Shown here: positions 9,708-64,000 of the stretch, piece after piece | Layout: every line of letters starts with the position of its first letter | Position numbering within the stretch: the stretch's first letter is position 1 | NCBI RefSeq assembly: GCF_006345805.1 | Contig: NC_043012.1 | Span: forward strand, 27,652,001-27,716,000 | Source of the DNA: Octopus sinensis | Lineage: Eukaryota | Reading direction: 5' to 3' | DNA: 64,000 nucleotides | Translations under genes and position numbers: made by a program | The notes under the pieces: generated by a model | Databases searched by the model: none | Told to the model about the DNA's origin: nothing | Seen by the model: only the letters and a program-made list of their open reading frames with translations

Positions 9708-10375
9708 AATCATATATATGTATATATATATGTGTGTATATATATATGTGTATATATTATGTGTATATATATGTGTATATATATATGTGTCTATATATAT
9801 ATATGTATATATGTGTGTGTATATATATATGTATATATATTGTATATATACATATGTATATATATATATGTATATATACATATGTATATATATATATGTA
9901 TATATATATGTATATATATATATGTATATATATATGTATATATATATGTATATATATGTATATATATATGTATATATATATGTATATATATATGTATATA
10001 TATATACATATGTATATATATATGTATATATTATGTATATATATATGTATATATATATGTATATATATATATATATATGTATATATATTGTAATATATAT
10101 GTATATATATATGTATATATATATGTATTATATATTATATATATATGTATATATATATGTATATGTATATGTATATGTATATATATGTATATGTATATGT
10201 GTATATATGTATATATATGTATATATATTGTATATATATGTATATGTATATATATGTATATATATATGTATATATACGTATATATATATATGTATATATA
10301 TATATAATATGTATATATATGTATATGTTATATATATGTATATAATATGTATATATACGTATATGTAAATATACG

Positions 10376-10407
<32 letters not shown>

Positions 10408-11361
10408 TAGTATATATATATGGTGTATATATATGTATATATATTATGTGTATATATGTATATATATATATGTGTATATATGTATATATATTATGTGTAT
10501 ATATATATGTGTATATATGTATATATATATATTATATGTGTATATATATATGTATATATATATGTGTATATATATATGTTATATATATATTGTATATATA
10601 TGTATATAATATGTATATATATAGTATATATGTATATATATAGTGTATATATGTATATATATATATGTATATATAATGTATATATGTATGTATATATATA
10701 TGTGTATATGTATATATATTATGTGTATATATGTATATATATATGTATATTGTATATATGTATACATATGTAATATATTGTATATATTGTATATATATAT
10801 ATATGTAAACATATGTATATATATGTATACATATGTATATATATATATGTATATATGTGTATATGTATATATATGTATATATGTGTATATGTATATATAT
10901 GTATACATATGTATATATATGTATATATGTGTATATATATATGTATACATATGTATATATATGTATATATATATGTATATATGTGTATATATATGTATGT
11001 ATATATGCATATATATATATATTATATATATATACATGTATATATATATATGTATATATATATGTATATATATATGTATATATGTGTATATATATGTATG
11101 TATATATGCATATATATATGTATATATATATATGTATATATATTATATGTATATATATATATGTATATTGTATATATGTGTATATATATAGTATGTATAT
11201 ATGCATATATATGTATATATATATATTGTATATATGTGTATATATATGTATGTATATATGCATATATATGTATATATGTGTATATAATATATGTATGTAT
11301 ATATGCATATATATATAATATATATATATATACATGTATATATGTATATATTATATAATAT

Positions 11362-11404
<43 letters not shown>

Positions 11405-11527
11405 GTATATATGTATATATGTAATATATATATGTATATATAATATATATATATATGTATATTATATATATGTATATATATACATATGTATATATGTGTA
11501 TATATGTATGTATATATATATATATAT

Positions 11528-11560
<33 letters not shown>

Positions 11561-11872
11561 GTATATATGTATGTATATATGTATGTATATATGTATATAT
11601 GTATGTATATATGTATATATTATGTATATATGTATATATATATGTGTATATATATGTGTATATATATATGTATATGTATATATGTGTATATATATGTATA
11701 TATGTATATATGTGTATATATATGTATGTATATATGCATATATATATATATGTATATATATGTATACATATGTATATATGTATATATATGTATGTATATA
11801 TGTATATATATGTATGTATGTATATATGTATATATATGTATGTATATATGTATATATATGTATGTATATATG

Positions 11873-11903
<31 letters not shown>

Positions 11904-11942
11904 GTATATATGTATGTATATATGTATATATATATGTATATG

Positions 11943-11995
<53 letters not shown>

Positions 11996-12371: not shown

Positions 12372-12780
12372 GGCGCAGGAGTGGCTGTGTGGTAAGTAGC
12401 TTGCTAACCAACCACATGGTTCCGGGTTCAGTCCCACTGTGTGGCATCTTGGGCAAGTGTTTTCTGCTATAGCCTCGGGCCGACCAATGCCTTGTGAGTG
12501 GATTTGGTAGACGGAAACTGAAAGAAGCCTGTCGTATATATGTATATATATATATATATGTATGTGTGTTTGTTTGTGTGTCTGTGTTTGTCCCCCCAGC
12601 ATTGCTTGACAACCGATGCTGGTGTGTTTATGTCCCCGTTACTTAGCGGTTCGGCAAAAGAGACCGATAGAATAAGTACTGGGCTTACAAAAAAGAATAA
12701 GTCCCGGGGTCGAGTTGCTTGATTAAAGGCGGTGCTCCGGCATGGCCGCAGTCAAATGACTGAAACAAGTAAAAGAGAGT
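12372..12780 (+). mobile_element. tRNA-derived SINE, full length
   Basis: A-box-like tggctgtgtggtaag, B-box-like ggttcagtccc, central TA/TG tract, tail ggcggtgctccggcatggccgcagtcaaatgactgaaac; near-identical copy at 29629. Confidence 0.9.
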
Positions 12781-15148: not shown

Positions 15149-15480
15149 GGCGCAGAAGTGGCTATGTGGTAAGTAGCTTGCTTACCAACTACATAGTTTT
15201 GGGCAAGTGTCTTCTACTATACCTTGGGCCAACCAAAGGCTTATGAGTGGATTTGGTAGACAGAAACTGAAAGAAGTCTGTCGTGTGTATATATATATAT
15301 GCTTGTGTGTGTTTGTCCCCCCACCATAGCTTGACAACCGATGTTGGTGTCTTGGTTCGGCAAAAGAGACTGATATAATAAGTACTAGGCTTACAAAGAA
15401 TTTGACCAGGGGTTGATTTGTTCGACTAAAGGCTTTGCTTCAGCATGGCTGCAGTCAAATGACTGAAACAAATAAAAGAA
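15149..15480 (+). mobile_element. tRNA-derived SINE with internal deletions
   Basis: Same head and tail as 12372-12780. Confidence 0.85.
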
Positions 15481-20045: not shown

Positions 20046-21404
20046 CAGGATGGCCCAAAAGTCACTAGACCATTTCAAAGTATAACTCTTTTATTTATTA
20101 AATATCAACATTCTTCCTCAAACTTCCATTTTCTATGCTGGATGGTTTGACAGGAGCTGCCAAGCTGGAGGATGCCCTTCCTAATGCCAACTATTTTACA
20201 GTGTACTGGGCACTTTTTGCATGGAACCAGCATAGATGCTTTTTATGTGGTTCTGGCACAGTTGCTTTTTTGGTAGCACCACACTTCTCAGAAAACATTT
20301 TAAATTAGTCTTGAAAATTATGTTCCTCAAATGACTGCCAAGTTGTTCTTGATAATGGTGGGCCCTTTCTAAAGAGTGTTCTATCACCATTTGTAATGTT
20401 CCTTGGCTTATTCTTTCAGTTTCTTCACTAATTTCAGCCTCAAATTGCTGGATGGTCTGAGGTTTGTTAGAGTATACTCTGTCTTTCAGATATCCCCTCA
20501 AGTCATTAAATCAGATGAGTGTGAAGGCCAATTGAATTTAGAGTTTCTTGAAATTATTCTCTTCTCAAAAATTTGCTTTAAGTGCTCCATCGTTGGCTGA
20601 GCTGTATGGACTGTAGCCCCATCTTTCTACCATCATACCTCTGGATGAAATGCTTATGCATGTCCTAATACCTTACACCTATGATAGTTAGTCTGTTTTC
20701 TGCCTTATCTTCAAATAATTAAGGACGAAGCATTCTTTCCTCACTTAACCTGCACCAAAGCATTACTCACATTGATGGGCTCTTTTTCATTTTCTGTCTC
20801 CCAAAATCAAATATTTTGCTTATTGACAAAGTTGTTGTGATGAAAGTGGGCCTTGTCACCCATAATGAAGTTGTGAATGAAATCATCTTCTTGCCATACC
20901 AATTCTCGGATCTAAGCAGCATACACTAATTGTACCTGATAATCAGCTGGCTTCAGTTCTTACACTAGTTGCACTTTATACAGGTATAAATTAAGCATCT
21001 TTGAATCCCCTGTTATGAGCTTCAGGGTATGCCCAAGCTGCTGGGATCACCTTTGGGTTGATGTTGAAGGCTCTTCTTCAGTGATCCACCATACACACTA
21101 AATGTTGACCTGTGACCTTCCTCCACCTGGTAAATCAATTAGATCCCACTGTTGTTCAAACTACTGAATATTACGTGTCTAGATGGCAGTTGTCCGACTC
21201 CAAAATGATGAAGGTAAGCTCTTTGAGCTAGCACAATTGATCATTAATTTTGCAGATAAAATTTGATTATTTTTAGTCATTGCTCTGTCAGGACTTTCTT
21301 CATGATTATTTTCTGTGAATTACATGTCAGTAATGTCCAACACAAAAAAAAATAATGGTAAAAGAGTTATATTTTAAGAGGTTTATTCACTTTTGGGCAA
21401 CTGT
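20046..21404 (-). mobile_element. Degenerate Tc1/mariner DNA transposon
   Basis: TA|caggatggcccaaaagtcactagac with decayed inverse gtttattcacttttgggcaactgt; minus-strand KDGATVHTA...WPSHSSDL...GYLKDRVYSNKPQT...GSHLRNII. Confidence 0.8.
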
Positions 21405-21459
21405 GTTTTTAACTTGTATGTTCTTTTTTGTCCTTGAATTAATGAATTCTGTTTTTCAG

Positions 21460-21685
21460 GTTATAGACTTGTTCAAAGAAATTCGGCTCTGCCTAGCTGA
21501 ATGCTTGTTTTATCTGGCAGCCCAGCAGCCTCTCCAAGAACATGATACCTTACAGCTTATAGCTTTTTTAAAAGAGCACTGTCGATGGAGTCCAGATGGG
21601 TCTTTGGATCCAGTGTCTTTATTTCTTCTTATAGCTCTCTTGTACTGCTTTGATAATAGCATATTAGAGCTTGAAGATAATGAAG
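21460..21685 (+). CDS. NUP205: NUP205 exon (VIDLFKEIRLCLAECLFYLAAQQPL...DGSLDPVSLFLLIALLYCFDNSILELEDNE), phase 0-1
   Basis: 226 nt, gtttttcag|GTT...GAAG|gtttgt; matches VSDLIKECRQSLAESLF...NGSLDAVNLALLMALLYCFD. Confidence 0.93.
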
Positions 21686-22214
21686 GTTTGTTGCTATAAA
21701 TTTATTGTTTTGTTTCTCATATTTAATAATACGACAATTTCCACTGGAGTTGTTGGACAATTTATCAATTTCCCAGATCAAAACTCATTATGCTTTTTGT
21801 AATTTTATGCACAGAAAATGAATTAGCTAATATTCAACTGGGTATACAGCAAAATTTTGGATTATTTACCAGATGAACTTAATGCACATAAGACAGGTGT
21901 ACTATAAATGTGAAACAGAATGAAATAATGGAATTTGCTTATGAAGAAAACTAGGAAATGATATACACACCATCAACTAAAATAATCTCTAATGTATACA
22001 TAAATATAGAGAAGCATATAATAATGATTCACAATGCAAATTAATCAAACTTTGACTTGCATCTTACAAGTATATTAAAATTACAGGTAAATAAAAATAA
22101 GGTCAATTTGAAAAATATTCCTCCCTACTTGCTCTCACAAAAAATATTTAAAAAAATGCTTGGATTTTTAACTTTCTTCCAAGTTTGTGGTTTTTATGTT
22201 TCCTATATATATAT

Positions 22215-24796: not shown

Positions 24797-27700
24797 GGGG
24801 CACTTGCCTTTAATGTTGGTGAAAAGAAAGAGGCTTGGAGAAGCCATTATGAAAGACTGCTGAATGTGGAGAATGAATGGGAGGAGGAGAGCCTGCCAAA
24901 TGTTGACCCAGTAGAGGGACCAGCTATCCGAATAGACGGCTCCCTAGTAGATAAAGCAATTAAGGATATGAAACTGGGTAAAGCCCCCGGCCCATCAGGA
25001 ATCACTGCTGAGATGCTTAAAACAGCTGGTTATGCGGGCTATGGCCTAGTCACCCGTATTGTTAACCAGGTAGTTCATAATGGAGTCATACCCAATGACT
25101 GGCGTAGCAGCACCATAGTCAACTGCTACAAGGGTAAGGGTGATGCTCTAGATAGAAATAACTACAGGGGTATTAAACTGTTGGATCAGGTGATGAAGAC
25201 CACAGAGAGAGTCATAACCCATCTCATTAGGGAGAGAATTCGCTTAGATGAGATGCAGTTTGGTTTTGTGCCAGGTAGAAGCACCACTGATGCTATATTC
25301 CTGGTCCGACAACTGCAGGAGAAGTACCTAGCTAAAGACAAATCCCTCTACATAGCTTTTGTGGACTTGGAGAAAGCCTTTGACAGGGTTCCCCGATCCC
25401 TTATCTGGTGGTCGATGCGGAAACTGTTGATTGACGAATGGCTAATAAGGGCTGTACAGGCTCTATACAGAGAGGCTGTCAGCAAGGTTAGGATTGGCAA
25501 CGAATATAGTGAAGAATTCCGGGTAGAAGTAGGTGTACACCAGGGCTCAGCTCTCGGTCCCCTTTTATTCATCATAGTCCTCCAGGCAATAACAGAGGAA
25601 TTTAAAACAGGTTGCCCCTGGGAGCTCCTCTATGCTGATGACCTGGCCCTCATAGCAGAATCACTACCGGAACTAAAAAAAGAAATTTCGGGTGTGGAAA
25701 CAAGGGTTAGAATCTAAGGGCCTTAGAGTAAATGTAGTGAAGACCAAAGTTATAGTATGCAGAAAGGTGAACTCAGCACACACCCCATCGGGCAAGTGGC
25801 CCTGCTCGAGCTGTAGGAAAGGTGTAGGTAGAAACTCCATAAGATGCACCTAGTGTAAGCTATGGACGCATAAGAGGTGCAGCAACATCAAAGGGAAATT
25901 AACTGATAAGATAGCTTTCATGTGTGGCAGATGCACAGGGACAATAGACACCACAGACACTCAAAAAACAGATTCCATCACACTCCAGGGGAAGAAACTA
26001 GAAGTAGTTGATAGTTTCCGCTACCTGGGTGACCAAGTTAGTAGTGGGGGTGGATGCTCAGAGAGTGTCACCACTAGAATACGAATAGCCTGGGCAAAGT
26101 TTAGAAAGCTCCTACCCCTACTGGCGACAAAGGGTCTCTCACTCAGAGTGAAAGGTAGATTGTATGATGCATGTGTGCGAACTGCCATGCTTCACGGCAG
26201 TGAAACATGGGCCATGACTGCAGAGGACATGCGTAGACTTGAAAGAAATGAAGCTAGCATGATCCGCTGGATGTGTAATGTCAGTGTGAATGCACGACAG
26301 AGTGTAAGCACCCTGAGAGAAATGCTAGGCATAAGAAGCATCAGATGCGGTGTGCAAGGGCGACGCTTGCGATGGTATGGTCATGTACAGCGGATGGATG
26401 AGGAGAGATGTGTGAAGAAGTGCCACTCCCGAACAGTTGAAGGAATCAGGGGGAGAGGTAGAGCCAGGAAGACATGGGATGAGGTAGTCAAGCATGACCT
26501 CAGAGCGTTGGGCCTCACTGAGGCAATGGCGAAGGACCGAGATCTCTGGAGATGTGCTGTGACTACTAAGACCCGGGATGCTTCCGGCACCAGTTCCGCA
26601 TAACCCCTGCCCATCCAAAGTACTTTGGATCCCGGAACATCTCGCTGTGCTTGAGGAGACCTGTCGAGTCAAGTGCATATACATGAACATCGAACCAAAT
26701 ATCAATGGAAACAGTAGCTGTGATACCTGTGCCGGTGACACATAAAAAGCACCATCCGAACGTGGCCGATGCCAGCATCGCCTCGACTGGCTTCTGTGCC
26801 GGTGGCACATAAAAAGCACCAACCGATCGTAGGATCCCGGAACATCTCGCTGTGCTTGAGGAGACCTGTCGAGTCAAGTGCATATACATGAACATCGAAC
26901 CAAATATCAATGGAAACAGTAGTTGTGATACCTGTGCCGGTGGCACATAAAAAGCACCATCCGAACGTGGCCGATGTCAGCACCGCCTTGACTGGCTTCT
27001 GTGCCGGTGGCACATAAAAAGCACCATCCAAACGTGACCGGTGCCAACCCTGCCTCGAATGGCTTCTGTGCCGGTGGCACATGAACATCGAACCAAATAT
27101 CAATGGAATCAGTAGTTGTGATACCTGTGCCGGTGACACATAAAGAGCACCATCCGAATGTGGCCGTTGCCAGTGCAGCCTCCACTGGCTTCTGTGCCGG
27201 TGGCACATAAAAAGCACCATCCGAACGTGACCGATGCCAACCCTGCCTCGAATGGCTCCTGTGCCGGTGGCACATAAAAAGCACCATCCGAACGTGGCTG
27301 ATGCCAGCACCGCCTGACTGGCTTCTGTATGGCACATAAAAAGCACCATCCGAGCGTGGCAGACGCCAGCACCGCCCCGACTGGCTTCTGTGCCGGTGGC
27401 ACATAAAAAGTACCAACCGATCGTGGGATCCCGGAACATCTCGCTGTGCTTGAGGAGACCTGTTGGGTCAAGTGCATGTACATGAACATCGAACCAAATA
27501 TCAATGGAAACAGTAGTTGTGATACCTGTGCCGGTGATACATAAAAAGCACCATCTGAACGAGTGCAGCCTCCACTGGCTTCTGTGCCGATGGCACATGA
27601 ACATCGAACCAAATATCAATGGAAACAGTAGTTGTGATACCTGTGCCGGTGACACATAAAAAGCACCATCTGAACGAGTGCAGCCTCCACTGGCTTCTGT

Positions 27701-29628: not shown

Positions 29629-30030
29629 GGCGCAGGAGTGGCTGTGTGGTAAGTAGGTTGCTAACCAACCACATGGTTCCGGGTTCAGTCTCACTGCGTG
29701 GCATCTTGGGCAAGTGTCTTCTGCTATAGCCCCAGGCCGACCAATGCCTTGTGAGTGGATTCGGTAGACGGAAACTGAAAGAAGCCTGTCGTATATATGT
29801 ATATATATGTATGTGTGTGTTTGTGTGTCTGTGTTTGTCCCCCTAGCATTGCTTGACAACCGATGCTGGTGTGTTTGTGTCCCCGTCACTTAGCGGTTCG
29901 GCAAAAGAGACCGATAGAATAAGTACTGGGCTTACAAAGAATAAGTCCCGGGGTCGATTTGCTCGACTAAAGGGGGTGCTCCAGCATGGCTGCAGTCAAA
30001 TGACTGAAACAAGTAAAAGAGTAAAGAGAG
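29629..30030 (+). mobile_element. tRNA-derived SINE, full length, preceded by a TA/CA microsatellite
   Basis: Near-identical to 12372-12780. Confidence 0.9.
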
Positions 30031-33896: not shown

Positions 33897-34067
33897 AAAT
33901 GATTCATAATTTTCCAATATTGTCAGATGATCAATACATTCGCAGCATCCACCAAGTTCTTGTATCAGATGAGCTATGGACCCATCCAGAAGTCAGAGCA
34001 GTTATTAGATTTGCGTGGGCCATGAGCCTTCGCCAGCTGTATATTTCACAGCACTCTTGTGCTCCAG
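33897..34067 (+). CDS. NUP205: NUP205 exon (EMIHNFPILSDDQYIRSIH...VRAVIRFAWAMSLRQLYISQHSCAP), phase 1-1
   Basis: 171 nt, long pyrimidine tract ttttag|AA...CCAG|gtacag; matches MIHQLPLLTEKQYIATIH...LQATVRLAWALALR. Confidence 0.93.
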
Positions 34068-34900: not shown

Positions 34901-35625
34901 TGAGCACACTCACACACTGAAATAGAATGAAAATCAATAGATGACCATAAATATTTTTCAGTTTCAGCCAGCAGAAGTTAGAAAGTGATTTAAGAGTCAC
35001 AGTTTGGTAGGAATCTATGAAAAGTACCTTGCCATTAGCTCTCAGCCTGTTAGGCATTTGTAAATTCTATTGATGAAAGCTAAAATAATAATGATAATTA
35101 ATGTCTATTTTCCATGTTGGACTGTTTGACAGGATCTGGCAAGCCACAGCATTCTCCTGAGCGCTGATGTCAGGTTTGGTAGGATTTCTACAGTTGGATG
35201 CCATTCCTATCCCTAATCACTTTACAGTGTGTAGTGGGTGCTGTTTTTGTGCTACTGACACTAATGAGGTTTCCAAGTAATTTGCATCACAGGGAAAGAA
35301 AAGGAAAGCCTTTTTGATTAAGTGGTAGGAGTACTTGAGAGGCAGTGGTAGCTTTCTGCTAGAAGTAGGGAGGCCAATGTCTAATAGAAGGACATGTTAG
35401 CTGTCTTGCTATAGGAAAAAGATACATGTGTAGTGTTTAATGCTAATGAGGTGAACAAAGGCGATAGGAATGTGGATGCCTTTGAAGTAAACAAATGAAT
35501 AAATCGATTCATAGTTAAAATAATTTATTCACTGGACTTAATTTGTCGTTGGCACACATAATTCTTCACTGCATACAAAATGTTGACAACTGCTACGAGT
35601 TGCTCGAAATAGAAACAGAGTACAT

Positions 35626-37415
35626 GGCACTGTCATGCCTTTGGGTGTCAGAAGTGAAAGTAGAGAAATCTGACGTCAGACGTCAACTTCGTGTATTTAC
35701 GTCGTCTTTCGTTTATTTACGCCGTTTATTTACGTACCACTGAAATGCAAGTAAAAGCTTGTATGTATGTATATATATATACATACATACACACATATAT
35801 ATAATATACATGTATATATACATATATATATATTTAATACATACATATATATAATATATACATGTATTTTTACCGCCTTTAGTCGCACAAATCGACCCCA
35901 GAACTTATTCTATCGGTCTTTTTTCTTAACCACTATACATTATATACATACATACAGATAGATAGATAGATACACACACACACATATAATAGATATAAAA
36001 TGTGTACGTGTGTACATTTTTCAGAAAAAAATTCATACATTTTAAATATCAATAGCATTTCTCTTATTTTTTACATGAAGTTTTCGAAAAATGAATTTAG
36101 AATGTAAAAATCAAATATATCAAATTAATAAACGCAAATTATTTTCAAATATCATTTTCAACGGTGAGATTATCAAAATATAAACTTGAAGTTAAGTTTA
36201 AAAATAAATGCGATACTCATTCTGTCTTGATACTTATGCTCAAATACATGGATATAGCTGTCGAATTTGTTCTATCAACTTCCCGAATATATCATCCTTA
36301 AATTCATAGCGCCACATGAATTCGATGAGATGGGTCTGAAGTAAATTTCTGGCTGTTCCACATTCTCTCCTATTTCGAGTCTTTACGTGTTTCCATAAAC
36401 ATTCTATGTGGTTGGTTGTGGCAAATGTTACCGGATCAACAAAATTTATGGCAGTTGAAAATCGAACAGCGGACACTCTATTACAGATTATACGCGAGCG
36501 TATATTGCCTGGTACAACAATAATATCCGACCTTTGGCGTTCGTATAATACACTCAGTCAGCTAGGATACAGACATTTGACCGTGAATCATTCTATAAAT
36601 TTTGTTGATCCGGTAACATTTGCCACAACCAACCACATAGAATGTTTATGGAAACACGTAAAGACTCGAAATAGGAGAGAATGTGGAACAGCCAGAAATT
36701 TACTTCAGACCCATCTCATCGAATTCATGTGGCGCTATGAATTTAAGGATGATATATTCGGAAGTTGATAGAACAAATTCGACAGCTATATCCATGTATT
36801 TGAGCATAAGTATCAAGACAGAATGAGTATCGCATTTATTTTTAAACTTAACTTCAAGTTTATATTTTGATAATCTCACCGTTGAAAATGATATTTGAAA
36901 ATAATTTGCGTTTATTAATTTGATATATTTGATTTTTACATTCTAAATTCATTTTTCGAAAACTTCATGTAAAAAATAAGAGAAATGCTATTGATATTTA
37001 AAATGTATGAATTTTTTTCTGAAAAATGTACACACGTACACATTTTATATCTATTATATGTGTGTGTGTGTATCTATCTATCTATCTGTATGTATGTATA
37101 TATGTATAGTGGTTAAGAAAAAAGACCGATAGAATAAGTTCTGGGGTCGATTTGTGCGACTAAAGGCGGTAAAAATACATGTATATATTATATATATGTA
37201 TGTATTAAATATATATATATGTATATATACATGTATATTATATATATGTGTGTATGTATGTATAATATATACATACATACAAGCTTTTACTTGCATTTCA
37301 GTGGTACGTAAATAAACGGCGTAAATAAACGAAAGACGACGTAAATACACGAAGTTGACGTCTGACGTCAGATTTCTCTACTTTCACTTCTGACACCCAA
37401 AGGCATGACAGTGCC
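35626..37415. mobile_element. Palindromic Merlin (IS1595-superfamily) DNA transposon derivative
   Basis: 8-bp TSD GAGTACAT (35618-35625 and 37416-37423); termini GGCAC.../...GTGCC; arms 35626-36449 and 36595-37415; transposase piece NRTADTLLQII..ILPGTTIISDLWRSY...HLTVNHSINFVDP..TTNHIECLW. Confidence 0.9.
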
Positions 37416-40143
37416 GAGTACATCTGTGGAGTTGATATGTCAGAAACGAATATTTTTCTGTGTGTGTGTGTGTGCATAGTTCATCTGAGACAATAGTCTA
37501 TCGTTTGAAAATTTCTATCGGTCTCTGCAATCTGCAAAAACCTACTTGTCTGTGTCATAGACCTTTCTCGTCTGTCTCCTAGGCCTTTCTTATCTGTCCC
37601 TCTGCTGACCACTGTATTTATAACAATTGTGGCAGCCAGAAGGATAGGCATACTGCAGCAGAGATTGTGCCTAAATAGGTCAGCTCTACCTGACATGGCT
37701 GAAGTTGTAGGTCAAAGGGAAATGTTCAATCACTTTTTGACAGGACAAAGAAAACCTTTTTTCGCGCCTGTTGATCATGGTGGTATGGACGACTGAGAGT
37801 TCTTAGATTCGGTTTTGAATCTAGGCTTGGAGAAGGAAGTGTTAATTTTTACACATGGCTTCCCTGGATTGGTGAAATAGAAGAGTCAAGTGGTGAAGAC
37901 ATTATTTCGGCCTAGCTAAGGCAGTCTAGCAAATGTAAAACTGCTGTCACAGAAAAGCCATTGTTCCACCGTGCAAAAAGTTCTGTTGAAGTGTTAATTT
38001 AAATTTGGCTATGGTGGATCGAATCCACTTCATGCCTGCAAGATGCACTACATCACTCCACTCACCAGTGATGTTCCAGGAAAGGAAACGAACGATCGAA
38101 GGAGACAAAAGAAATATATAGTAAATGTCTTGGAATGTTTTTCAGCATTGAAATGTGTCTGGTGCTGTTGTCGTGGTTCCTTGCTGAGGTTACCAAGGAT
38201 GATAGTATAGCATGCTGGAGTGATGCGCAAGACAGAAAATTTTCTATCTTAATTACGTAACCAAACAAGGGTCTAACAGGGGGAAATTATGTCTAAACAT
38301 GAATGCAAAGCATATGAATGTTCGACATGCTTTGAGTTGGGAAAATAGTTGAGCAAAATAAGACAGTAGAGGTGCATGTGTGCAATAGGGCTTGCAAGGC
38401 TGAGGCAGTAATGCTAGTGCATTGATTCAGGTACAGTGTACAGTGTTGAATATGCCAGCTGGTGCATGAGGCATTATATGCCTCGATCGTACAGGAGCAA
38501 AAGTGTGGCATGCTGGCACATTGTAAGGGACAAACAACTTTCTCTGTATGTGTGACTGACCTAGGGCTTTACAGAGACTAGTTGTGTCTATAAGAGCGCA
38601 GGGAGCAGAGTGAACATGTATGTGTGTATGAACCATGTGCAGATGCGTGTGCAAGACCAGACATTGAGGAAAGGTGCATGCGTGAAAAGAAATTGCAGAC
38701 ATCCAAAAGGAGAACATATAGCAGAAAACATGTTATAAAAACAGGTGATCGATGTGTGTGCAGTGCAAACAATGAATGAATGAAGCAAAAATGACAAACT
38801 TGGTTAGAAAGTCTTTTGGTCCTGGTAAGCTAAATAGTAGCATTTGAAATGCAAAAATAGGTGCATGCAAAGAAAGTTCAAGTCTATGGCTGTGGAAAAC
38901 ATTGTGCATGTGTGCTCCCATAGTTTTATCCAGCTAGTTTCTGTGCATGTAGCTGTCGAAATGATGCATTTATTGGCTTCCATGGTCTGCAAATTCCTTG
39001 TGTGTCGGCTGTGTTGCATTTTCTTGAAGTGCATCATGGATTGCATCACAGTATAGAGCTTTCTGTAGCAGGTCAAAGGAGGGTGCATCTTAGTGGTGAT
39101 GAAGGTTGTAATTATTTTTCCTTTGGTTTAGCGACTATTGATATGAAGACTGTAGTTCTTTAATTTGAAGTCAGAAAAAATGCAGTGGTATGTAGTATCA
39201 GACAGTAGCAATTCTCTTTACACAGAGTCACTAGTTTGTTGGTAATGTAGCTTCAGAAGACAGCAATTCTTTTTCATGGCGTCACCAGTTGTAATAATGA
39301 AAGATTATTTTGTATCGGTTAAAATTAAATTTTAACAGCATGTTGTAGGATGTGAAAGTTGAACAATGCATGAAGTTTTAAGGAAATATTTATCTTTACC
39401 CGTTACATTATACAATATCTTGCCTCGATGGGCAGGTGATAAAATCATAAAGCATGCAAAGTAAAGATAGTTGTAGGTTTTTCTTGCGTAATTTGTGTTT
39501 GTGTCATTGTTTAGTAGTAATTACAGAGAAAGATAAAATGTTGTAAAAGAACAGAATTAGAGCTAGTGAGATTGAGAGAGTGTGGGACGTTGTCTCTCTC
39601 TCAATTCAGGAGTTGTCACCAAGGTGACTATCTGTCTTTTGCTTGCAGGTTCTTGTTATTATAACTATCCAGAAGGATAGACATATCGTTAAGAACAATA
39701 GATTTAGTTGGTGGTCTTGTTATCTTAATTCTAGCTTTTGGTGAAATAGGTTAGAAGGGTCAAGTGGTGAAGACATTATTTCGGCCTAGCTAAGGCAGTC
39801 TGGCAAATGTAAAACTGCTGTCACAGAAAAACCATTGTTTCACCGTGAGAAAAGTTCTGTTGAAATGTTAATTTAAATTTGGCTATGGTGGATCGAATCT
39901 ACTTCATGCCTGCAACATGCACTACAGGTATGTTTGAATGAAGCTAAAATTTTTTTTTTTTTCAATTTCAACATGAGCTGCAATATTTTTTAGTTTCATG
40001 TCCTGTACTTTTCCAGATGCAATTAACTGAGAATGTTATCGCTCCTCTAGCCACATTACTTGCTAGTTTAAATTTTAGTATACAATTTTCTTTAAATTAC
40101 CATTTATCATGATAATATAATTATTGTATTCCATTCTTGCCAG

Positions 40144-40256
40144 GTGTCAATGAGTATTGTGAGGAAGATGAAACTATTGTAATGGCTGCTATCAAAGAAA
40201 AAGTATTTCTGTTTCTCAGAACTCAAGTTGTAGCTTCCCCAAGTTTCTTTCAAGAG
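40144..40256 (+). CDS. NUP205: NUP205 exon (GVNEYCEEDETIVMAAIKEKVFLFLRTQVVASPSFFQE), phase 1-0
   Basis: 113 nt, not in ORF track; ttcttgccag|GT...GAG|gtgaga; matches EFTEADEAMAELAIADNVFLFLMESVVVSEYFYQE. Confidence 0.9.
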
Positions 40257-46590: not shown

Positions 46591-49500
46591 TTAACCCTTT
46601 CGTTACTAACCCAGCCGTAGTCTGCCGAAAAATTTTTTGGTTCATAAGACCAACCCGGCAGTAGCCAGCCGAGAGTGCCCTTTGTTATTTAAACATGAAT
46701 TTAAGCACAAATCTCGTTAGTATATTTGTGAAAATGCATGATTTCATTTTGTAAATAGTTGAGTTATAGTATCCGATATTGCTTGATGTGATATCTGAAC
46801 TCAGTGAATTTTAAGAGATTTTTTTGGCATCGATTTTTTTTTAACTTTGAAAATGGATAGGAGTTTCATGTTATCAAGCAGTGATTCCAAATTTAAAGCT
46901 TTTTCAATGGAAAATATGGAGATATTGAGAAAAAGAACGAATGAGGTACAAAAGCATGTGGTGTACTAAGATGAATCGGATATTTCTGTATCTGAAACCG
47001 AAAGCAGCGATTCTGAAAAAACTGAAAGCAGCGATAGCGAAGCAAAGACGATTTTACATCGGAATGAAGTAAAAACTTTAAAATGTTTTGTTTAGCAATT
47101 TTTCTGAGGAGATGGCGTCTATGCAAAGTCTTCCCTAGGAAGTGAAACCATTAGATTTTTATTTTTTTCAGTATGCTTGTTTGAGGCGATCACTGCGGAA
47201 ACAAACTGTTACACAGAATGTAAACAAACAGTATATGCCAGGAAAGGCCACGAAATGGGGGATCAAAGTTTGGAAAATTTGTGAAGCAAATACTGGGTAC
47301 TGCTGTGGAGTTAGTTTTTATACAGGGAAAATAATGTTAGTCAGCATGGCCTAGGGAACGATGTGGTCTGGAATTTATCACTTCCATACCATAACCAGGG
47401 CCGTATATTATTTTTTGACCAATTTCTTTAGTTCGGTCAAACTTGCGGTGGATTTAGGTGGATTCCAATTTATTTCACCTTTATGATACACCTGTTCTGT
47501 TGTGCATTAAATTCAACTGATAATCTAGTGATGTGCTCAATTCTTCTATATCAAAACTTAGTTGCATACCCATTTGAATATTAGCTGCTGATTCATTTTC
47601 TATGGTGATCATCATCATCATTTAGCGTCCGTTTTCCATGCTAGCATGGGTTGGACGGTTCTACTGGGGTCTGTGAAGCCAGAAGGCTTCATCAGGCCCA
47701 GTCAAATCTGGCAGTGTTTCTACGGCTGGATGCCCTTCCTAACGCCAACCACTCCGTGAGTGTAGTGGGTGCTTTTTACGTGCCACCCGCACAGGTGCCA
47801 GACAGAGCTGGCAAACGGCTACGAACGGATGGTGCTTTTTATGTGTCACCGGCACAAGGGCCAGGCGAGGCTGGCAACGGACACGAAACGGGGCGGTGCT
47901 GGCAACGGTCGCGAAACGGAAGGTTCTCTTACATGCCACCGGCACTGGTAACACATCTGCAATTTCCATTGATCGATTTCCATTCTGATCCTCACTTGCC
48001 TCAACGGGTCTTCACAAGTAGAGTTTCGACATGCCACCGGCACTGGTAACACATCTGCAATTTCCATTGATCGATTTCCATTCTGATCCTCACTTGCCTC
48101 AACGGGTCTTCACAAGTAGAGTATCGACATGCCACCGGCACTGGTAACACATCTGCAATTTCCATTGATCGATTTCGATTCTGATCCTCACTTGCCTCAA
48201 CAGGTCTTCACAAGTAGAGTTTTGTGTCCCAAGAAGGGAAGGTATGCATACGTAGGCTGGCTCCATCCCAAGTAGAAGGCCACGGGTTATGGACTCACTT
48301 GTCCTGCCGGGTCTTCTCGCGCACAGCACACTTCCAGAGGACTCGGTCTCTAGTCATTTCCTCAGTGAGACCTAAAGTTCGAAGGTCGTGCTTCACCACC
48401 TCGTCCCAGGTTTTCCTGGGTCTGCCTCTTCCACAGGTTCCCTCAACCGCTAGGGTGTGGCACTTTTTCACACAACTATCTTCATCCATTCTCGCCACAT
48501 GACCATACCAGCGCAATCGTCTCTCTTGCACACCACAACTGATGCTTCTTAGGTCCAGCTTTTCTCTCAAGGTACTTACACTCTGTTGATTATGAACACT
48601 GACATTACACATCCATCGGAGCATACTGGCTTCATTTCTTGTGAGCTTACGCATATCCTCAGCAGTCACGGCCCATGTTTCACTGCCATGTAGCATGGCT
48701 GTTCGTACACACGCATCATACAGTCTGCCTTTCACTCTGTGCGAGAGGCCTTTTGTCACCAGCAGGGGTAAGAGCTCTCTGAACTTTGCCCAAGCTATTC
48801 TTACTCTAGCAGTTACACTTTCAGCACACCCGCCCCCGCTGCTGATTTGGTCACCTAGGTAACGGAAACTATCAACTATTTCTAGTTTTTCTCCCTGGAA
48901 AGTGACGGAAGTTGGTCTCAGAGCATTTTCAGTGTTTATTGTTCCTGAGCATCTGCCACATACAAAAACCATCTTCCTAGTTAGCCTTCCTTTGACATTG
49001 CTGCACCTCTTATGTGTCCATAGCTTACACTTGGTGCATCTTATAGAGTTTCTACCTACACCTTTTCTACAGATTGAGCAGGGCCATCTACCTGAAGGCG
49101 TTTGTGATTTGTCTACCTTCCTACTGATTACGACTTTGGTTTTAGCTAGATTGACTCTGAGGCCCTTCGATTCTAATCCTTGTTTCCACACCTGAAACTT
49201 CTCCTCCAGTTCTGATAGCGACTCAGCAATTAGAGCAAGGTCATCAGCATAGAGCAGCTCCCAAGGGCATCCTGTCTTGAATTCCTCCGTTATTGCCTGG
49301 AGGACTATGATAAATAGGAGGGGGCTGAGTACTGAGCCTTGGTGGACCCCTACCTCTACCCGGAATTCTTCACTGTACTCGTTTCCAACCCTCACCCTAC
49401 TAGCAGCGTCCCTATACATGGCCCGCACAGCTCTCACTAGCCATTCATCTATCCCTAGTTTCCTCATTGCCCACCAGATAAGGGATCGGGGGACCCTGTC

Positions 49501-52500
49501 GAAGGCTTTCTCCATGTCAACAAAAGCCAGGTACAGGGGCTTATCTTTGGCTAGGTATTTCTCCTGCAGCTGCCTTACCAGGAATATAGCATCAGTAGTA
49601 CTTTTCCCTGGCACAAACCCAAACTGCATCTCATCTAAACTAACTCTCTCTCTAATTAGTTGGGCTATGACCCTCTCCGTAACCTTCATCACCTGATCCA
49701 ACAGCTTGATACCTCTGTAATTATTTGTATCTAGGGCGTCACCTTTACCTTTGTAGCAGTTGACTATTATGCTGCTACACCAGTCATTGGGTATGACTCC
49801 TTTGTGTATCACCTGATTAACTATATGGGTGACTAGGCTATAGCCGACACTACCAGACATTTTGAGCATCTCTGCAGTGATTCCTGATGGGCCTGGGGCT
49901 TTCCTGTCTTCATGCTTCTAATTGCCTTAGCTACCACGGAACTATCAACTCGGATAGCTGGTCCCTCTGTTGGGTCAACATTCGGCAGATTCTCTTTATC
50001 CCATTCATTTTCTTTATTCAGCAAACTTTCATAGTGGCATCTCCAAGCCTCTCTCTTTGCATCCTCATTTAGCGCAAGTGAACCATCTTCCATGCGAACA
50101 CACTTCTCTCCTACCACATCACGATTCTCTCTCACACACTGTCTTGCAACGCGAAACACCTCCAGTGTTTGGTCCTCACAGCGCAGAACATTGGCAAATT
50201 TTTTCTTATCTGCTTCCCCTCTGGCTAAATAAACCTGTCTCTTAGCTTCTCTTTTGGCAGTCTGATACAATTCCCTGCTACCCCCATTTTTCCAGACCTT
50301 CCAAGCCTGTCCTTTTCTCTAATAGCCCTGTCTACAATATTGTTCCACCACCACGTTATTAGGTCGAGAGGGGACTTTGCACCAGCCACAGATCTGGTCA
50401 GTGGCTCTCAGCAGGTTGTCCCTTAGAAACGTCCAGCTGTCTTCTACCCCCTGTGATGCTCTATCCCCTTCTACTTCGTCAGAGGCTTCAAGTAATATGT
50501 CTCTAAATCTCTGTCCATTTGCAGGATCTTTAAGCTTCCAGATCCTTCTTCTCCATATTGGTCGTCTTCTGGTTGTCCTCCTAGTCCTGATCCTAAAGTC
50601 ACTAACTACCAGTCTATGTTGTGGGGTACATTCTTCACCTGGGAAGGTTTTGGCATTTATAAGCAGCCATCTCTCCCTTTGCCTTGCAAGGATGTAGTCA
50701 ATTTGGCTGGTATGTTGGCCCGATCGGTAAGTGACTAGATGGCTGGTAGGTTTCCTGAAGTTAGTGTTGCAAATCATAAGATTATTTGCATCGCAGAACT
50801 CCAGCAGCCTGGTTCCCTCCTCGTTTCGGGAGCCATAGCCATAGCCTCCATGTACGCCATGGAAGCCCCCAGCATGTCGTCCAACGTGACCATTGAAGTC
50901 ACCAGCCACAAAGATAAGGTCTCTGTCGTTCGTCAACGAGGTAGTCTGCAGTAGAGTGTCATAGAATCGGTCTTTCTGTCCATTGGGTAGCCCCGACTGA
51001 GGAGCATAGGCTGATATAATGGTTGCTAAACTATGATGAAGCACTAATCTAATCTTAAGTATTCTGTCACATACTCTGATTACCTCAATTACTTTATCTA
51101 CCCATTTCTCAGCGATAAGTATAACCACGCCACCAACCCCGTCAGTGTTCCCTGCCCAGAAAATCTTGTACCTGCGTTCCTTGCCTGTGAGGAACCTAGC
51201 TGATCCTCCTCTCCACCTTATTTCTTGCATGCAACATATATCCACACATCTCCATTCAAGCATCTCGACTATCTCACCAGACCTACCTTTCAGAGTGCCA
51301 ACGTTGAGGGTGCCAACCCTGAGGGTGTGGGAGGCATGGGCTCTAGAGACCCTGGGACGGTGGACAGTAGCTTCGTATACCTGAAAAGAAAGCTCGCATT
51401 TGGCAGAATTCATGTGCAAGAAATGAAGTAGTAAAGTAGCCTTCAGTACAACCTGCATAACGCTAGCCTTTCATATTTTGCACTGTATGAACATTACCTT
51501 ACATAGGTCGAGACTAGGGGTAGGGAGGGGTAGGGATGGTGAGAGCATTTGCAGTCTTCATGGGAAGCAACCCCGGAATGGCAAAGAATAGGAACTTCCG
51601 GCATGTGTGGTGGGGGTGGGAGGGCGGGTGCACCGTAGGTTAGTAAGGTTCTGTAAAATCGGAGCTAGCAAATGGGTTTGAAAAATCAGAGTGGCAAGAC
51701 TAAACGAAAAAAAAATTTGAGCTAGACAGGGTAATGAGGGAATACTGAAAGAATGAGGAACAATACAATGAGATGGAAATTGAAGAATAGTGAAAGAATA
51801 AAAATAAGTGCAAGATAGAAGGTAGTCGTAGCTAGGTTGAACAATTCACTTAGCTTTAGCCAATCATGATCTGTGCGTATTTCGTCTTTAGATATTTTGA
51901 AGCGAGTGGGGTTAACGATAATGCGATCGCTCTTTTATATATGGCGATGATGGTTATGGAAGGGGGGGGGCATAGAGAGACCTAGGGAGAGAGATATGGC
52001 GATGATGGTTATGGGAAGAGGGGGACATAGAGAAACAGGGAGAGAGATAGGGTTAGTTAGAGAGAGAGGTCAAGGAACACGTAGTGATAAAGCGGTGTGA
52101 GGAAATTTGACTAGGGACGGCATTGTCGATAATAAACATTTGATAAATAGGTTTGAAAATCAACATTATCGATAAATAGGTTTGAAAATCAGAAAAATCA
52201 GAGGGAATAATAATCATTATTGATAACTACTATAACATCGTGGCTTAGTAAGGTTAGTAAGGTTCTGTAAAATCGGAGCTAGCAAATGGGTTTGAAAAAT
52301 CAGAGTGGCAAGACTAAACGAAAAAAAAAAGTTTGAGCTAGACAGGGTAATGAGGGAATACTGAAAGAATGAGGAACAATACAATGAGATGGAAATTGAA
52401 GAATAGTGATGTTTAAACAAAATTTTAATATTTTTACCTTTTGCTCAATTTACCTGGATTTTCTTGTAATTAGAGTCACTTTGAGACAAAAGTTATGCAA

Positions 52501-57880: not shown

Positions 57881-58710
57881 AGTGTTCAAACCGGCCGTAA
57901 CCGGCCAAAGTAATTCCCCTCTATTTGTTCAAGCTGGCTGTATCTGATTTCTCTACGAAATCGCTAAAACAATAAACAAATCACATTATTGAATTCTCGT
58001 AGCTTTGAGATAATGCGAGATGAAGCCTTTCCTGTCTCTATTCAAGTATAACTACTGTGAAATTGTTTAGACCACATGGTTTTTTCAACATTTCAAGAGA
58101 AGTGTTTACCTTGGTAGGGAAAGAAATCGTGTCAGTAAGCAGTGATTCCAACTTGGAAGGATTTACAATTGATGATATAGAAGATATAAACGAAAAGAAA
58201 AGTATTTTGTCTTTGGATGAATCTGATATCGATATCAGTGATTATTTGTCAGTCGATGAAGATTTTGATAACGAAAGTGATGAAAATGATATTGTAAACA
58301 AGGCAACATGGTCAAAAATTACAACACCAAACACTATGTCTGATTTTACAGAAAACACTGGTCCACAACACAATTTACCTCCTGATGCTCAACCATTAGA
58401 CTATCTGTTTTTATTTTTACCTGAAAGTTCTTTGAAGATGTTGTGGAGGAAACAAACAAATATGCGCAACGTTTAATTTCTATTCGTGGAAGAAGCGAAA
58501 CACTATGGCAGCCAACTAATACTGCGGAAATGAGAGCGTTTTTTACAATTAATATTATGTTGTTAAACAGATTCCCCGACTGTGGAACTATTGGAGTCCT
58601 GATGTAAGGTATGGCAATCCATATATTTCAAGAATAATGTGGAAGACGAAGTATTCAAAAATATTTCAGTATTTGCATTTAACTGATTCTGCTAATGCCC
58701 CCAACAAAAG
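57881..58710 (+). mobile_element. Second piggyBac family, 5' part with transposase N-terminus
   Basis: Begins taaccctttag; ORF 58057-58476 acidic N-terminus, WSK...FTENTGP..NLPPDAQPLDYLFLF; later KYSKIFQYLHL. Confidence 0.75.
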
Positions 58711-62956: not shown

Positions 62957-64000
62957 TAACCCTTTTGATATTAACCCGGCTGTAGCTGGCCAAAAAATTT
63001 TTTGGTTCATAAGACCAACCTGGCCGAGAGTACCAATTGTTATTTAAATGTGAATTTAAGCACAAATCTCGTTAGTACATTTGTGAAAATGCGTGATTTC
63101 ATTTTGTAAATAGTTGAGTTATAGTATCCGATATTGCTTGACGTGATATCTGAACTCAGTGAATTTTGGGAGATTTTTTTCCACTTTATTTTGGCATCGA
63201 TTTTTTTTAACTTTGAAAATGGATAGGAGTTTCATGTTATCAAGCAGTGATTCCAAATTTAAAGCTTTTTCAATGGAAAATATGGAGATATTGAGAAAAA
63301 GAACGAATGAGGTACAAAAGCATGTGGTGTACTAGGATGAATCGGATATTTCTGTATCTGAAACCGAAAGCAGCGATTCTGAAAAAACTGAAAGCAGCGA
63401 TAGCGACAGCAAAGACGATTTTACATCGGAATGAAGTAAAAACTTTAAAAATGTTTTTATTAGCAATTTTTCTGAGGAGATGGCGTCTATCCAAAGTCTT
63501 CCTTAGGAAGTGAAACCATTAGACTTTTATTTTTTTCAGTATGCTTGTTTGAGGCGATCACTGCGGAAACAAACTGTTACACAGAATGTAAACAAACAGT
63601 ATATGCCAGGAAAGGCCACGAAATGGGGGATCAAAGTTTGGAAAATTTGTGAAGCAAATACTGGGTACTGCTGTGGATTTAGTTTTTATACAGGGAAAAT
63701 AATGTTAGTCAGCATGGCCTAGGGAACGATGTGGTCTGGAATTTATCACTTCCATACCATAACCAGGGCCGTATATTATTTTTTTGACCAATTTCTTTAG
63801 TTCGGTCAAACTTGCGGTGGATTTAGGTGGATTCCAATTTATTTCACCTTTATGATACACCTGTGCATTAAATTCAACTGATAATCTAGTGATGTGCTCA
63901 ATTCTTCTATATCAAAACTTTGTTGCATACCCATTTGAATATTAGCTGCTGATTCATTTTCTATGGTGATGTTTAAACAAAATTTTAATATTTTTACCTT
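62957..64000 (+). mobile_element. Non-autonomous piggyBac, same family as 46591; runs off the window
   Basis: Very similar to 46591-47609 (QYMPGKATKWGIKVWKICEANTGYC identical). Confidence 0.9.

What the first reader, a model, noticed from the sequence alone, without database searches (positions are those of the whole stretch)
35626..37415. A 1.79-kb Merlin transposon that is almost entirely a palindrome, built from two right ends and still flanked by a clean 8-bp TSD
Seen: arms 35626-36449 (824 bp) and 36595-37415 (821 bp) are reverse complements; I noticed only about three 1-nt indels. The 145-bp spacer encodes the middle of an IS1595/Merlin DDE transposase (NRTADTLLQII...IISDLWRSY). Both arms carry the transposase C-terminus and the 3' end, and GAGTACAT flanks both sides. 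Known: Merlin elements start with GG and make 8-9 bp TSDs. Inference: the 3' half was copied in inverted orientation over the 5' half (template switch or abortive gap repair), and this head-to-head element then transposed as a unit, i.e. a foldback or large MITE caught at birth. Transcribed within the NUP205 intron it would form an about 820-bp near-perfect dsRNA hairpin, a strong candidate ADAR substrate (coleoids edit heavily) or endo-siRNA source that could silence the parent family.
Basis: partly seen in the sequence, partly recalled or inferred. Interest (0 to 1): 0.8.

Follow-up and report, generated by a model that had tools for sequence, protein, structure and literature searches.

The report
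Palindromic Merlin transposon remnant in NUP205 intron
A 1.79-kb remnant of a Merlin "cut-and-paste" transposon, sitting in an intron of the nuclear-pore gene NUP205, has had its front half replaced by a mirror-image copy of its back half; the structure is real and very young, but it is a known kind of transposon rearrangement, and its proposed mobility and RNA roles are untested.

Summary
Arms 35626-36449 and 36595-37415 are reverse complements with no substitutions and three 1-nt indels. They flank a 145-bp spacer, and GAGTACAT sits on both sides.

The coding remnant matches Pfam DDE_Tnp_IS1595 (E=5e-14, profile 50-152 of 153). It is 85% identical to an Octopus bimaculoides protein. The element starts with GG and has an 8-bp duplication, so it meets the published Merlin criteria. 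It lacks the N-terminal half, including the first catalytic Asp, so it cannot move on its own.

The host gene is a NUP205 orthologue on the + strand. The element lies in a ~6-kb intron.

The claim that the palindrome "transposed as a unit" is not shown. A template switch at the terminal repeat, during repair or replication of a parent already inserted here, gives the same structure and the same duplication. No second copy could be looked for, because no cephalopod genome was searchable.

The dsRNA is predicted (-1406 kcal/mol), but editing and small RNAs are untested.

This is a new member of a known kind, analogous to maize Mu killer. Interest is moderate to low.

The parts
35618..35625 (.). 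Left copy of the 8-bp target-site duplication GAGTACAT
   Evidence: It is identical to 37416-37423 and directly abuts the element end.
35626..36449 (-). Left arm (824 bp). It is an inverted copy of the Merlin 3' end: terminal GGCACTGTC..., subterminal repeats, a 3' non-coding region rich in microsatellites, and the transposase C-terminus.
   Evidence: 0 substitutions and 3 one-base indels against the reverse complement of 36595-37415.
35626..35656 (+). Outermost 31 nt of the terminal inverted repeat, starting with GG. The mirror copy is at 37385-37415.
   Evidence: exactly two matches in the window and none in 100 shuffles.
35688..35734 (.). Subterminal direct repeats (three ATTTACG motifs; units of 13 and 20 bp), next to two overlapping GACGTCA motifs (the first a complete TGACGTCA palindrome) at about 35672-35687. 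These are candidate transposase-binding sites (inference). They are mirrored at 37307-37353.
   Evidence: (Tandem Repeats Finder).
36240..36449 (-). Left-arm copy of the transposase C-terminus (INFVDPVTF...DDIFGKLIEQIRQLYPCI plus the stop codon). It keeps the ancestral reading frame.
   Evidence: The C-terminus aligns to the ends of the Octopus bimaculoides proteins P0001 and P0002 (...EIFGKLLEQIRHLYPCV).
36449..36450 (.). The non-homologous junction where the inverted copy meets the original sequence. In the parent, the break maps inside the conserved FLV|AVE strand, between the first and second catalytic residues.
   Evidence: G36450 cannot pair with T36594, so the arm boundary is exact.
36450..36594 (+). 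The 145-bp unique spacer. It encodes the middle of the DDE domain and includes the second catalytic Asp (IISDLW).
36595..37415 (+). Right arm (821 bp), the original 3' end of the element. It holds the transposase C-terminus with the catalytic Glu (NHIECLW), a 1-nt deletion that creates a frameshift (…DDIFGS*), about 650 bp of 3' non-coding sequence, and the terminal repeat.
36282..36282 (.). Extra C in the left arm (CCC, versus CC at 36760-36761). The left arm holds the ancestral state. The other two indels are at 35777 and 35940.
37416..37423 (.). Right copy of the 8-bp target-site duplication GAGTACAT
33917..34039 (+). Upstream NUP205 exon (ILSDDQYIRSIHQVLVSDELWTHPEVRAVIRFAWAMSLRQL). The coordinates cover the aligned part only.
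   Evidence: it aligns to human NUP205 residues about 301-341.
40128..40256 (+). Downstream NUP205 exon (IPFLPGVNEYCEEDETIVMAAIKEKVFLFLRTQVVASPSFFQE). The coordinates cover the aligned part only.
   Evidence: it aligns to human NUP205 residues about 343-385, directly following the upstream exon.

Best explanation
This is a genuine, very young, non-autonomous derivative of a Merlin (eukaryotic IS1595-like) DNA transposon, lying in a sense-strand intron of a NUP205 orthologue.

The last 966 bp of a parent element survive intact (36450-37415). Everything upstream of them has been replaced by an inverted copy of the last 821 bp.

The most likely origin is a single DNA-synthesis accident. A nascent strand that had just copied one terminal inverted repeat re-annealed to the identical repeat at the other end, copied the 3' end inwards in the wrong orientation, and was then joined without homology at 36449/36450. 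This could happen during synthesis-dependent repair of the gap left by excision, or as a replication template switch.

The 8-bp duplication shows that a Merlin transposase integrated something at this site. It does not show whether that was the normal parent, later rearranged in place, or the palindrome itself. I slightly favour rearrangement in place, about 60:40.

The remnant lacks the N-terminal half of the transposase, including the first catalytic Asp, so it can move only if an autonomous relative supplies transposase in trans.

As part of the NUP205 pre-mRNA it is predicted to fold into a hairpin of about 820 bp. Any editing or small-RNA consequence is inferred, not shown.
For: - Structure and TSD.
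- Transposase identity: Pfam DDE_Tnp_IS1595 at E=5e-14, covering profile positions 50-152 of 153. The closest proteins are from Octopus bimaculoides, at 85% and 81% identity.
- The first-Asp motif (V.IDE..F), present in the longer homologues P0004, P0007, P0011 and P0016, has no counterpart anywhere in the window.
- Published Merlin criteria (terminal GG, 8-9 bp TSD, DDE_Tnp_IS1595 domain) are all met, and O. bimaculoides is reported to be unusually rich in Merlin, with 191 sequences (PMC8101967).
- Youth: there are 0 substitutions in 821 bp. This puts a 95% upper bound of about 0.36% on arm divergence, assuming no arm-to-arm gene conversion.
- Against an assembly artefact: both flanks are unique and carry collinear NUP205 exons. 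The palindrome stops exactly at the transposon ends. No other perfect palindrome exists in the window.
- Fold: the minimum free energy is -1405.9 kcal/mol, against about -347 for shuffles. 821 of 856 pairs are arm-to-arm, and the longest perfect helix is 342 bp.
Against: - No parent element or second copy could be examined, so the breakpoints in the parent, the parent's repeat length and any microhomology are unknown.
- The difference pattern is unusual for neutral decay: 3 indels, all in short runs, and no substitutions. It fits long-read consensus errors, or slippage during error-prone repair synthesis, equally well. The indels therefore say little about age.
- No reads were available to confirm the assembly.
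- The host taxon was not directly identified.
Confidence: 0.8

Rival explanations
1. One reading: the palindrome formed elsewhere and then transposed into this intron as a unit, using its two identical right ends. It would be the founder or a member of a mobile foldback-like family.
For: - The 8-bp TSD is clean and the ends are perfect and identical.
- From my own knowledge, some transposases work as well or better on two identical ends; Mos1 mariner with two 3' repeats is an example.
- The zero divergence between arms also fits a very recent insertion.
Against: - The TSD is explained equally well by insertion of the parent.
- There is only one copy in 64 kb.
- The 22-nt terminal sequence is absent from JGI metagenome contigs. 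That is a weak test, because no cephalopod genome was searchable.
- From my own knowledge, P elements and Ac/Ds need non-interchangeable 5' and 3' ends. Whether Merlin does is unknown.
- Most unusual internal rearrangements of young DNA transposons are singletons at their site of birth.
Confidence: 0.35
2. Assembly artefact: a normal Merlin insertion, or none at all, sits here, and a chimeric fold-back long read or a mis-threaded assembly graph produced the palindrome.
For: - The arms differ only by 1-nt indels in a homopolymer and in TA runs, a typical long-read consensus error pattern.
- Inverted terminal repeats can confuse assembly graphs.
Against: - The palindrome ends exactly at GG...CC termini flanked by a TSD.
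- The flanks differ from each other and continue the same gene collinearly.
- The inner junction at 36449/36450 has no sequence overlap that a graph could mis-thread through.
- No other perfect palindrome exists in the window.
Confidence: 0.07
3. Two independent, 5'-truncated Merlin copies inserted head-to-head.
For: None beyond the bare inverted arrangement.
Against: - The arms are identical over 821 bp, down to their microsatellites and a shared SINE-like fragment.
- A single TSD brackets the whole unit, and there is no internal TSD.
- Cut-and-paste insertion does not produce 5' truncation.
Confidence: 0.01
4. Functional reading: the intronic hairpin is a working source of double-stranded RNA. 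It would be hyper-edited by ADAR and/or diced into small RNAs that repress the parent Merlin family, as Mu killer does in maize.
For: - It lies on the sense strand in an intron of a housekeeping nucleoporin gene, so read-through transcription is expected.
- The predicted stem is about 820 bp.
- The arms include 207 bp of transposase coding sequence.
- There are precedents: Mu killer (PMC3440606) and Ac composite insertions (bioRxiv 10.1101/2020.01.07.897926).
Against: - No expression, editing or small-RNA data were available.
- Most of the stem is AT-rich non-coding sequence and microsatellite.
- Introns are short-lived.
- An endo-siRNA response to hairpins has not, to my knowledge, been shown in cephalopods.
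- A single young copy shows no sign of selection.
Confidence: 0.1

Closest known systems
Merlin superfamily DNA transposons (Feschotte 2004; survey in PMC8101967), related to bacterial IS1016/IS1595
   Same: It has the DDE_Tnp_IS1595 transposase domain, termini beginning 5'-GG, an 8-bp target-site duplication and an animal host. Its closest relatives are in Octopus bimaculoides, a genome reported to be rich in Merlin.
   Different: Its inverted termini are 821-824 bp and include coding sequence. Described Merlin repeats are 24-462 bp. The transposase is truncated, lacking the N-terminal half and the first Asp. The long arms are a secondary duplication, not the family's native repeats.
Maize Mu killer (inverted duplication of part of mudrA plus TIRA; PMC3440606) and Ac/Ds composite insertions with inverted duplications (bioRxiv 10.1101/2020.01.07.897926)
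   Same: It is a natural inverted duplication of one end of a DNA transposon, including part of the transposase gene and the terminal repeat. It is placed where read-through transcription from a host gene would make a long hairpin RNA.
   Different: The maize cases have demonstrated hairpin transcripts, siRNAs and heritable silencing in a plant with RNA-directed DNA methylation. Here nothing downstream of the DNA structure is shown. The host is an animal. The duplication is bounded by both transposon ends and a TSD, so it might still be mobilisable.
Internally rearranged non-autonomous derivatives made by abortive gap repair (Ds from Ac, Rubin & Levy 1997, cited in PMC4678618; P-element and mariner deletion derivatives)
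   Same: It is a non-autonomous derivative that retains the ends, has a non-homologous internal junction, and was presumably made during repair synthesis.
   Different: Typical products are simple internal deletions, with or without filler DNA. Here the product is an almost complete palindrome in which one end replaces the other.
Foldback / long-inverted-repeat elements (Drosophila FB, Galileo) and palindromic MITEs such as human MADE1 (my own knowledge)
   Same: Most of the element consists of two long inverted arms around a short centre.
   Different: Foldback arms are built from tandem subrepeats, and the families have many copies. MADE1 is 80 bp long and has thousands of copies. This element is a single known copy of 1.79 kb, and its arms are ordinary 3'-end sequence.
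Intronic inverted Alu pairs as ADAR substrates in primates (my own knowledge)
   Same: Inverted transposon copies within one intron are predicted to pair in the pre-mRNA.
   Different: Alu pairs are about 300 bp, diverged, and come from independent insertions. This is one element with arms that are perfectly matched apart from three 1-nt indels.

Membership tests
Merlin superfamily (eukaryotic IS1595-like DNA transposons) | Transposase with a DDE_Tnp_IS1595 (PF12762) domain | tested here: met
   E=5.1e-14, 53 bits against a cut-off of 27, covering profile positions 50-152 of 153 (a partial domain); every hit but two (P0019, P0029) carries PF12762.
Merlin superfamily (eukaryotic IS1595-like DNA transposons) | Terminal inverted repeats with a conserved terminal 5'-GG-3' (PMC8101967) | tested here: met
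   both ends read GGCACTGTCATGCC... The arm length of 821-824 bp exceeds the described range of 24-462 bp, because the arms are a secondary duplication.
Merlin superfamily (eukaryotic IS1595-like DNA transposons) | Target-site duplication of 8 or 9 bp | tested here: met
   GAGTACAT on both sides, exactly 8 bp. The neighbouring bases differ.
Merlin superfamily (eukaryotic IS1595-like DNA transposons) | Complete D-D-E triad (needed for autonomy, not for membership as a derivative) | tested here: not met
   the second Asp (IISDLW) and the Glu (NHIECLW) are present. The first-Asp block (V.IDE..F) is absent from the element and from the whole window.
MITE | Small size (a few hundred bp), no coding remnant, high copy number | tested here: not met
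   The element is 1,790 bp and holds 145 + 2x~207 bp of transposase coding sequence. There is one copy in the window. The genome-wide copy number could not be tested.
Foldback-type elements | Long inverted arms built of tandem subrepeats, in a multi-copy family | tested here: inconclusive
   Long arms are present. They hold only microsatellites and a short subterminal repeat, not subrepeat arrays. The copy number could not be tested.
Mu killer-type hairpin silencer locus | Inverted duplication that includes transposase coding sequence and a terminal repeat | tested here: met
Mu killer-type hairpin silencer locus | Transcription through the duplication from a host promoter | not testable with these tools
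   The context is favourable: a sense-strand NUP205 intron. No RNA data were available.
Mu killer-type hairpin silencer locus | Small RNAs from the hairpin and silencing of the autonomous family | not testable with these tools
   No small-RNA or expression data were available, and no autonomous copy was identified.
   There is no second copy in the window. The terminal 22-mer is absent from JGI metagenome contigs. Exact-protein look-ups found nothing. No cephalopod genome was searchable.

The most novel reading that the evidence does not exclude
An animal counterpart of maize Mu killer. A spontaneous inverted duplication of an active Merlin transposon is transcribed constitutively inside the NUP205 pre-mRNA. 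It would yield a near-perfect double-stranded RNA of about 820 bp that is hyper-edited and/or processed into small RNAs which start silencing of the parent Merlin family in a cephalopod.
Probability: 0.08. Interest if true: 0.65.

Novelty: new member of a known kind. Interest (0 to 1): 0.3.

Why it matters
This is a clean, datable snapshot of how a cut-and-paste transposon can turn one end into both ends in a single step. Such an event could seed long-inverted-repeat or foldback-like non-autonomous families, and it creates a built-in hairpin-RNA gene. If sibling copies exist, it would show that Merlin transposase accepts two identical right ends. If the intronic hairpin is edited or diced, it would give a natural entry point for asking how a cephalopod first recognises a DNA transposon. 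As it stands, it is one rearranged transposon copy in an intron, with no demonstrated effect on the host.

Tried and rejected
- **Other copies in the window.** A search for the 31-nt end with up to 3 mismatches, blastn with the element, and tblastn with 30 homologues found only the element itself, plus microsatellite and SINE-fragment hits.
- **Exact-protein look-ups.** Look-ups of the two ORFs in the element and of the two Octopus bimaculoides homologues found nothing on record.
- **More distant homologues.** Loci of P0007 and P0003 (58-61% identity; L001 and L002) were fetched. L001 showed no DNA-level similarity to the element; the script stopped before L002 was compared. I therefore dropped them as models of the parent's ends.
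- **Metagenome scan.** A scan of JGI metagenome contigs for the terminal 22-mer gave 0 hits.
- **Paralogous empty site.** The joined flanks have no paralogue in the window that spans the insertion point.
- **Rfam.** No family match anywhere in the window.
- **Species identification.** A search with NUP205 exons returned only one Logan-derived fragment at 94% amino-acid identity. Its contigs are about 85-87% identical to the window at the DNA level, so they come from a related species, not the same one.
- **Explanations rejected.** I rejected two independent head-to-head insertions, pervasive assembly palindromes, and the label 'MITE'.

Full report

- A global alignment of 35626-36449 with the reverse complement of 36595-37415 has no substitutions and exactly three 1-nt indels.
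- In all three indels the left arm is longer: A at 35777 in a TA run, T at 35940 next to a TA run, and C at 36282 (CCC versus CC) (the same blocks appear).
- The arms flank a unique 145-bp spacer (36450-36594).
- GAGTACAT lies immediately outside both ends (35618-35625 and 37416-37423). From the window's composition (36.6% G+C), an 8/8 match at those fixed positions has a probability of about 2e-5.
- The terminal 31 nt occur only at the two ends, with no matches in 100 shuffles.
- The apparent extension of the inverted repeat into the flank (pair I4) is just the palindromic GTAC inside the duplication.
- No other near-perfect palindrome exists in the 64 kb. All other long inverted pairs are diverged repeats at 74-94%.

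**What the element is.**

- The spacer and right arm form one reading frame...AVENRTADTLLQIIRERILPGTTIISDLWRSYNTLSQLGYRHLTVNHS|INFVDPVTFATTNHIECLWKH....
- It matches Pfam DDE_Tnp_IS1595 at E=5e-14, over profile positions 50-152 of 153.
- A search of the protein collection returned 30 relatives, all but two of which carry that domain. The best two are from Octopus bimaculoides, at 85% and 81% identity.
- In the alignment, the second catalytic Asp (IISD) and the Glu (NHIE) are present. The block holding the first Asp (V.IDE..F, seen in P0004, P0007, P0011 and P0016) lies upstream of the break and is missing.
- tblastn with all 30 relatives finds no such sequence anywhere in the window. The element is therefore non-autonomous.
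- The survey PMC8101967, summarising Feschotte 2004, defines Merlin by terminal repeats of 24-462 bp with terminal 5'-GG, TSDs of 8 or 9 bp, and the DDE_Tnp_IS1595 domain. It also notes 191 Merlin sequences in O. bimaculoides. The GG termini, the 8-bp duplication and the domain are all met here.

The C indel lies in coding sequence.

- The left arm (CCC) reads ...DDIFGKLIEQIRQLYPCI-stop. This aligns to the very ends of the octopus proteins (...EIFGKLLEQIRHLYPCV).
- The right arm (CC) is frameshifted to ...DDIFGS-stop.
- So the copy that is contiguous with the spacer carries the derived deletion, and the inverted copy keeps the ancestral state.
- Three indels with no substitutions is not what neutral decay usually gives. 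It fits long-read consensus errors, slippage during error-prone repair synthesis at the time the palindrome formed, or later slippage. I could not separate these without reads.

**Context.**

- Candidate exons on the + strand, joined together, match Pfam Nup192 (E=1.6e-16, 59 bits against a cut-off of 28.7).
- They also match human NUP205 from PDB entry 5ijn (E=3.5e-47).
- The exon at about 33917-34039 aligns to human residues about 301-341. An exon at about 40128-40256 follows on directly, at about residues 343-385.
- The species was not identified. A related species in the Logan assemblies is about 85-87% identical at the DNA level over one NUP205 exon and its flanks.

**Mechanism.** The structure equals the reverse complement of the last 821 bp followed by the last 966 bp of a parent element. 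The inner boundary is exact: G36450 cannot pair with T36594, so there is no ambiguity on the side that can be read. The parent's sequence upstream of 36450 is unknown, so microhomology cannot be fully assessed.

The simplest route is a template switch. A strand that has just copied one terminal repeat is complementary to the other end's repeat. It can re-anneal there, copy the 3' end inwards in inverted orientation, and then be joined non-homologously to the normally copied 3' portion. This can happen during synthesis-dependent repair of the gap left by excision (abortive gap repair; Rubin & Levy 1997, as cited in PMC4678618) or at a stalled replication fork.

Either route, acting on a parent already inserted in this intron, leaves the parent's GAGTACAT duplication and perfect GG ends untouched. 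The clean duplication therefore proves a Merlin integration at this site. It does not prove that the palindrome was what integrated.

I slightly favour in-place origin, for two reasons. Unusual rearranged derivatives of young DNA transposons are usually singletons at their birthplace. It is also unknown whether Merlin transposase accepts two right ends; from my own knowledge, P and Ac/Ds do not, while Mos1 does. Only a genome-wide junction search, or a parental allele at this site, can decide.

**Artefact check.**

- A fold-back chimeric read would not end precisely at transposon termini inside a TSD, with two different flanks that continue the same gene.
- A graph mis-threading through the terminal repeats cannot create the overlap-free inner junction.
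- I put an artefact at about 7%. Spanning reads remain the proper test.

**RNA consequences.**

- Folded as RNA, the 1,790 nt give -1405.9 kcal/mol, against about -347 for shuffles.
- 821 of 856 pairs are arm-to-arm, and the longest uninterrupted helix is 342 bp.
- Being in a sense-strand intron of a housekeeping gene, the element should be transcribed, and from general knowledge long perfect duplexes are promiscuous ADAR substrates.
- The closest functional precedents are maize Mu killer, a partial inverted duplication of mudrA plus TIRA that is read through from a flanking gene and makes siRNAs (PMC3440606), and Ac composite insertions.
- Nothing of this kind is shown here. Only 207 bp of each arm is coding. 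The rest is AT-rich sequence, microsatellites and a SINE-like fragment.

**Verdict.** 'Transposed as a unit', 'MITE at birth' and the dsRNA roles are unproven, and the first of these is no better supported than its in-place rival. The element is a new member of a known kind: an inverted-duplication derivative of a DNA transposon. It is tidy and young, and of moderate-to-low interest unless sibling copies or RNA effects are found.

Noticed in passing
window 37118-37170 (mirror copy at about 35871-35923): Both arms contain a fragment of about 55 bp (AAAAGACCGATAGAATAAGTTCTGGGGTCGATTTGTGCGACTAAAGGCGG) homologous to a dispersed SINE-like repeat also seen at 12656-12720, 29903-29977 and 15409-15433. 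Relative to those copies, it has an internal deletion between two AATAAGT motifs. It is flanked by TA/CA/GATA microsatellites. It predates the duplication, so the parent's 3' region already carried captured or filler DNA.
   Followed up: partly
window 35672-35734 (mirror at 37307-37369): The subterminal region has two overlapping GACGTCA motifs (the first a complete CRE-like TGACGTCA palindrome), followed by three ATTTACG motifs (13-bp unit CGTTTATTTACGC, 1.9 copies). These are possible transposase-binding sites or promoter elements.
   Followed up: no
window 24980-26576 and 48307-49902: Two copies of a LINE-like retroelement lie in inverted orientation about 22 kb apart, at 80-83% complementarity over about 1.6 kb. 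Both are inside NUP205 introns. The ORF at 24710-25714 matches RVT_1 (E=7e-24). They form a second, more diverged potential intramolecular duplex in the same pre-mRNA.
   Followed up: partly
window about 26.5-28.6 kb: Reading frames repeat the peptide ...NIEPNINGNSSCDTCAGDT... about every 115 bp, which indicates a minisatellite array next to the LINE copy. The 115-bp period comes from ORF spacing only; no tandem-repeat search was run here.
   Followed up: no
window 63507-63719 (+); similar ORFs at 47139-47351 and 18.1-18.6 kb; weak hit at 58425-58604: There are piggyBac-type transposase fragments. Pfam DDE_Tnp_1_7 matches at E=9e-7 at 63.5 kb and E=1.5e-3 at 58.4 kb. They recur in several NUP205 introns, in both orientations.
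   Followed up: partly
window 9843-11980: A cluster of many overlapping inverted pairs at 74-79% identity, each about 230 bp. It looks like a degenerate repeat array with internal inverted symmetry.
   Followed up: no
L003 and L004 (Logan runs SRR11869394, SRR11869384) versus window 20387-21979: Contigs from a related species align at about 85-87% DNA identity across a NUP205 exon and its flanking intron. These runs could be mined for the orthologous, probably empty, insertion site.
   Followed up: partly
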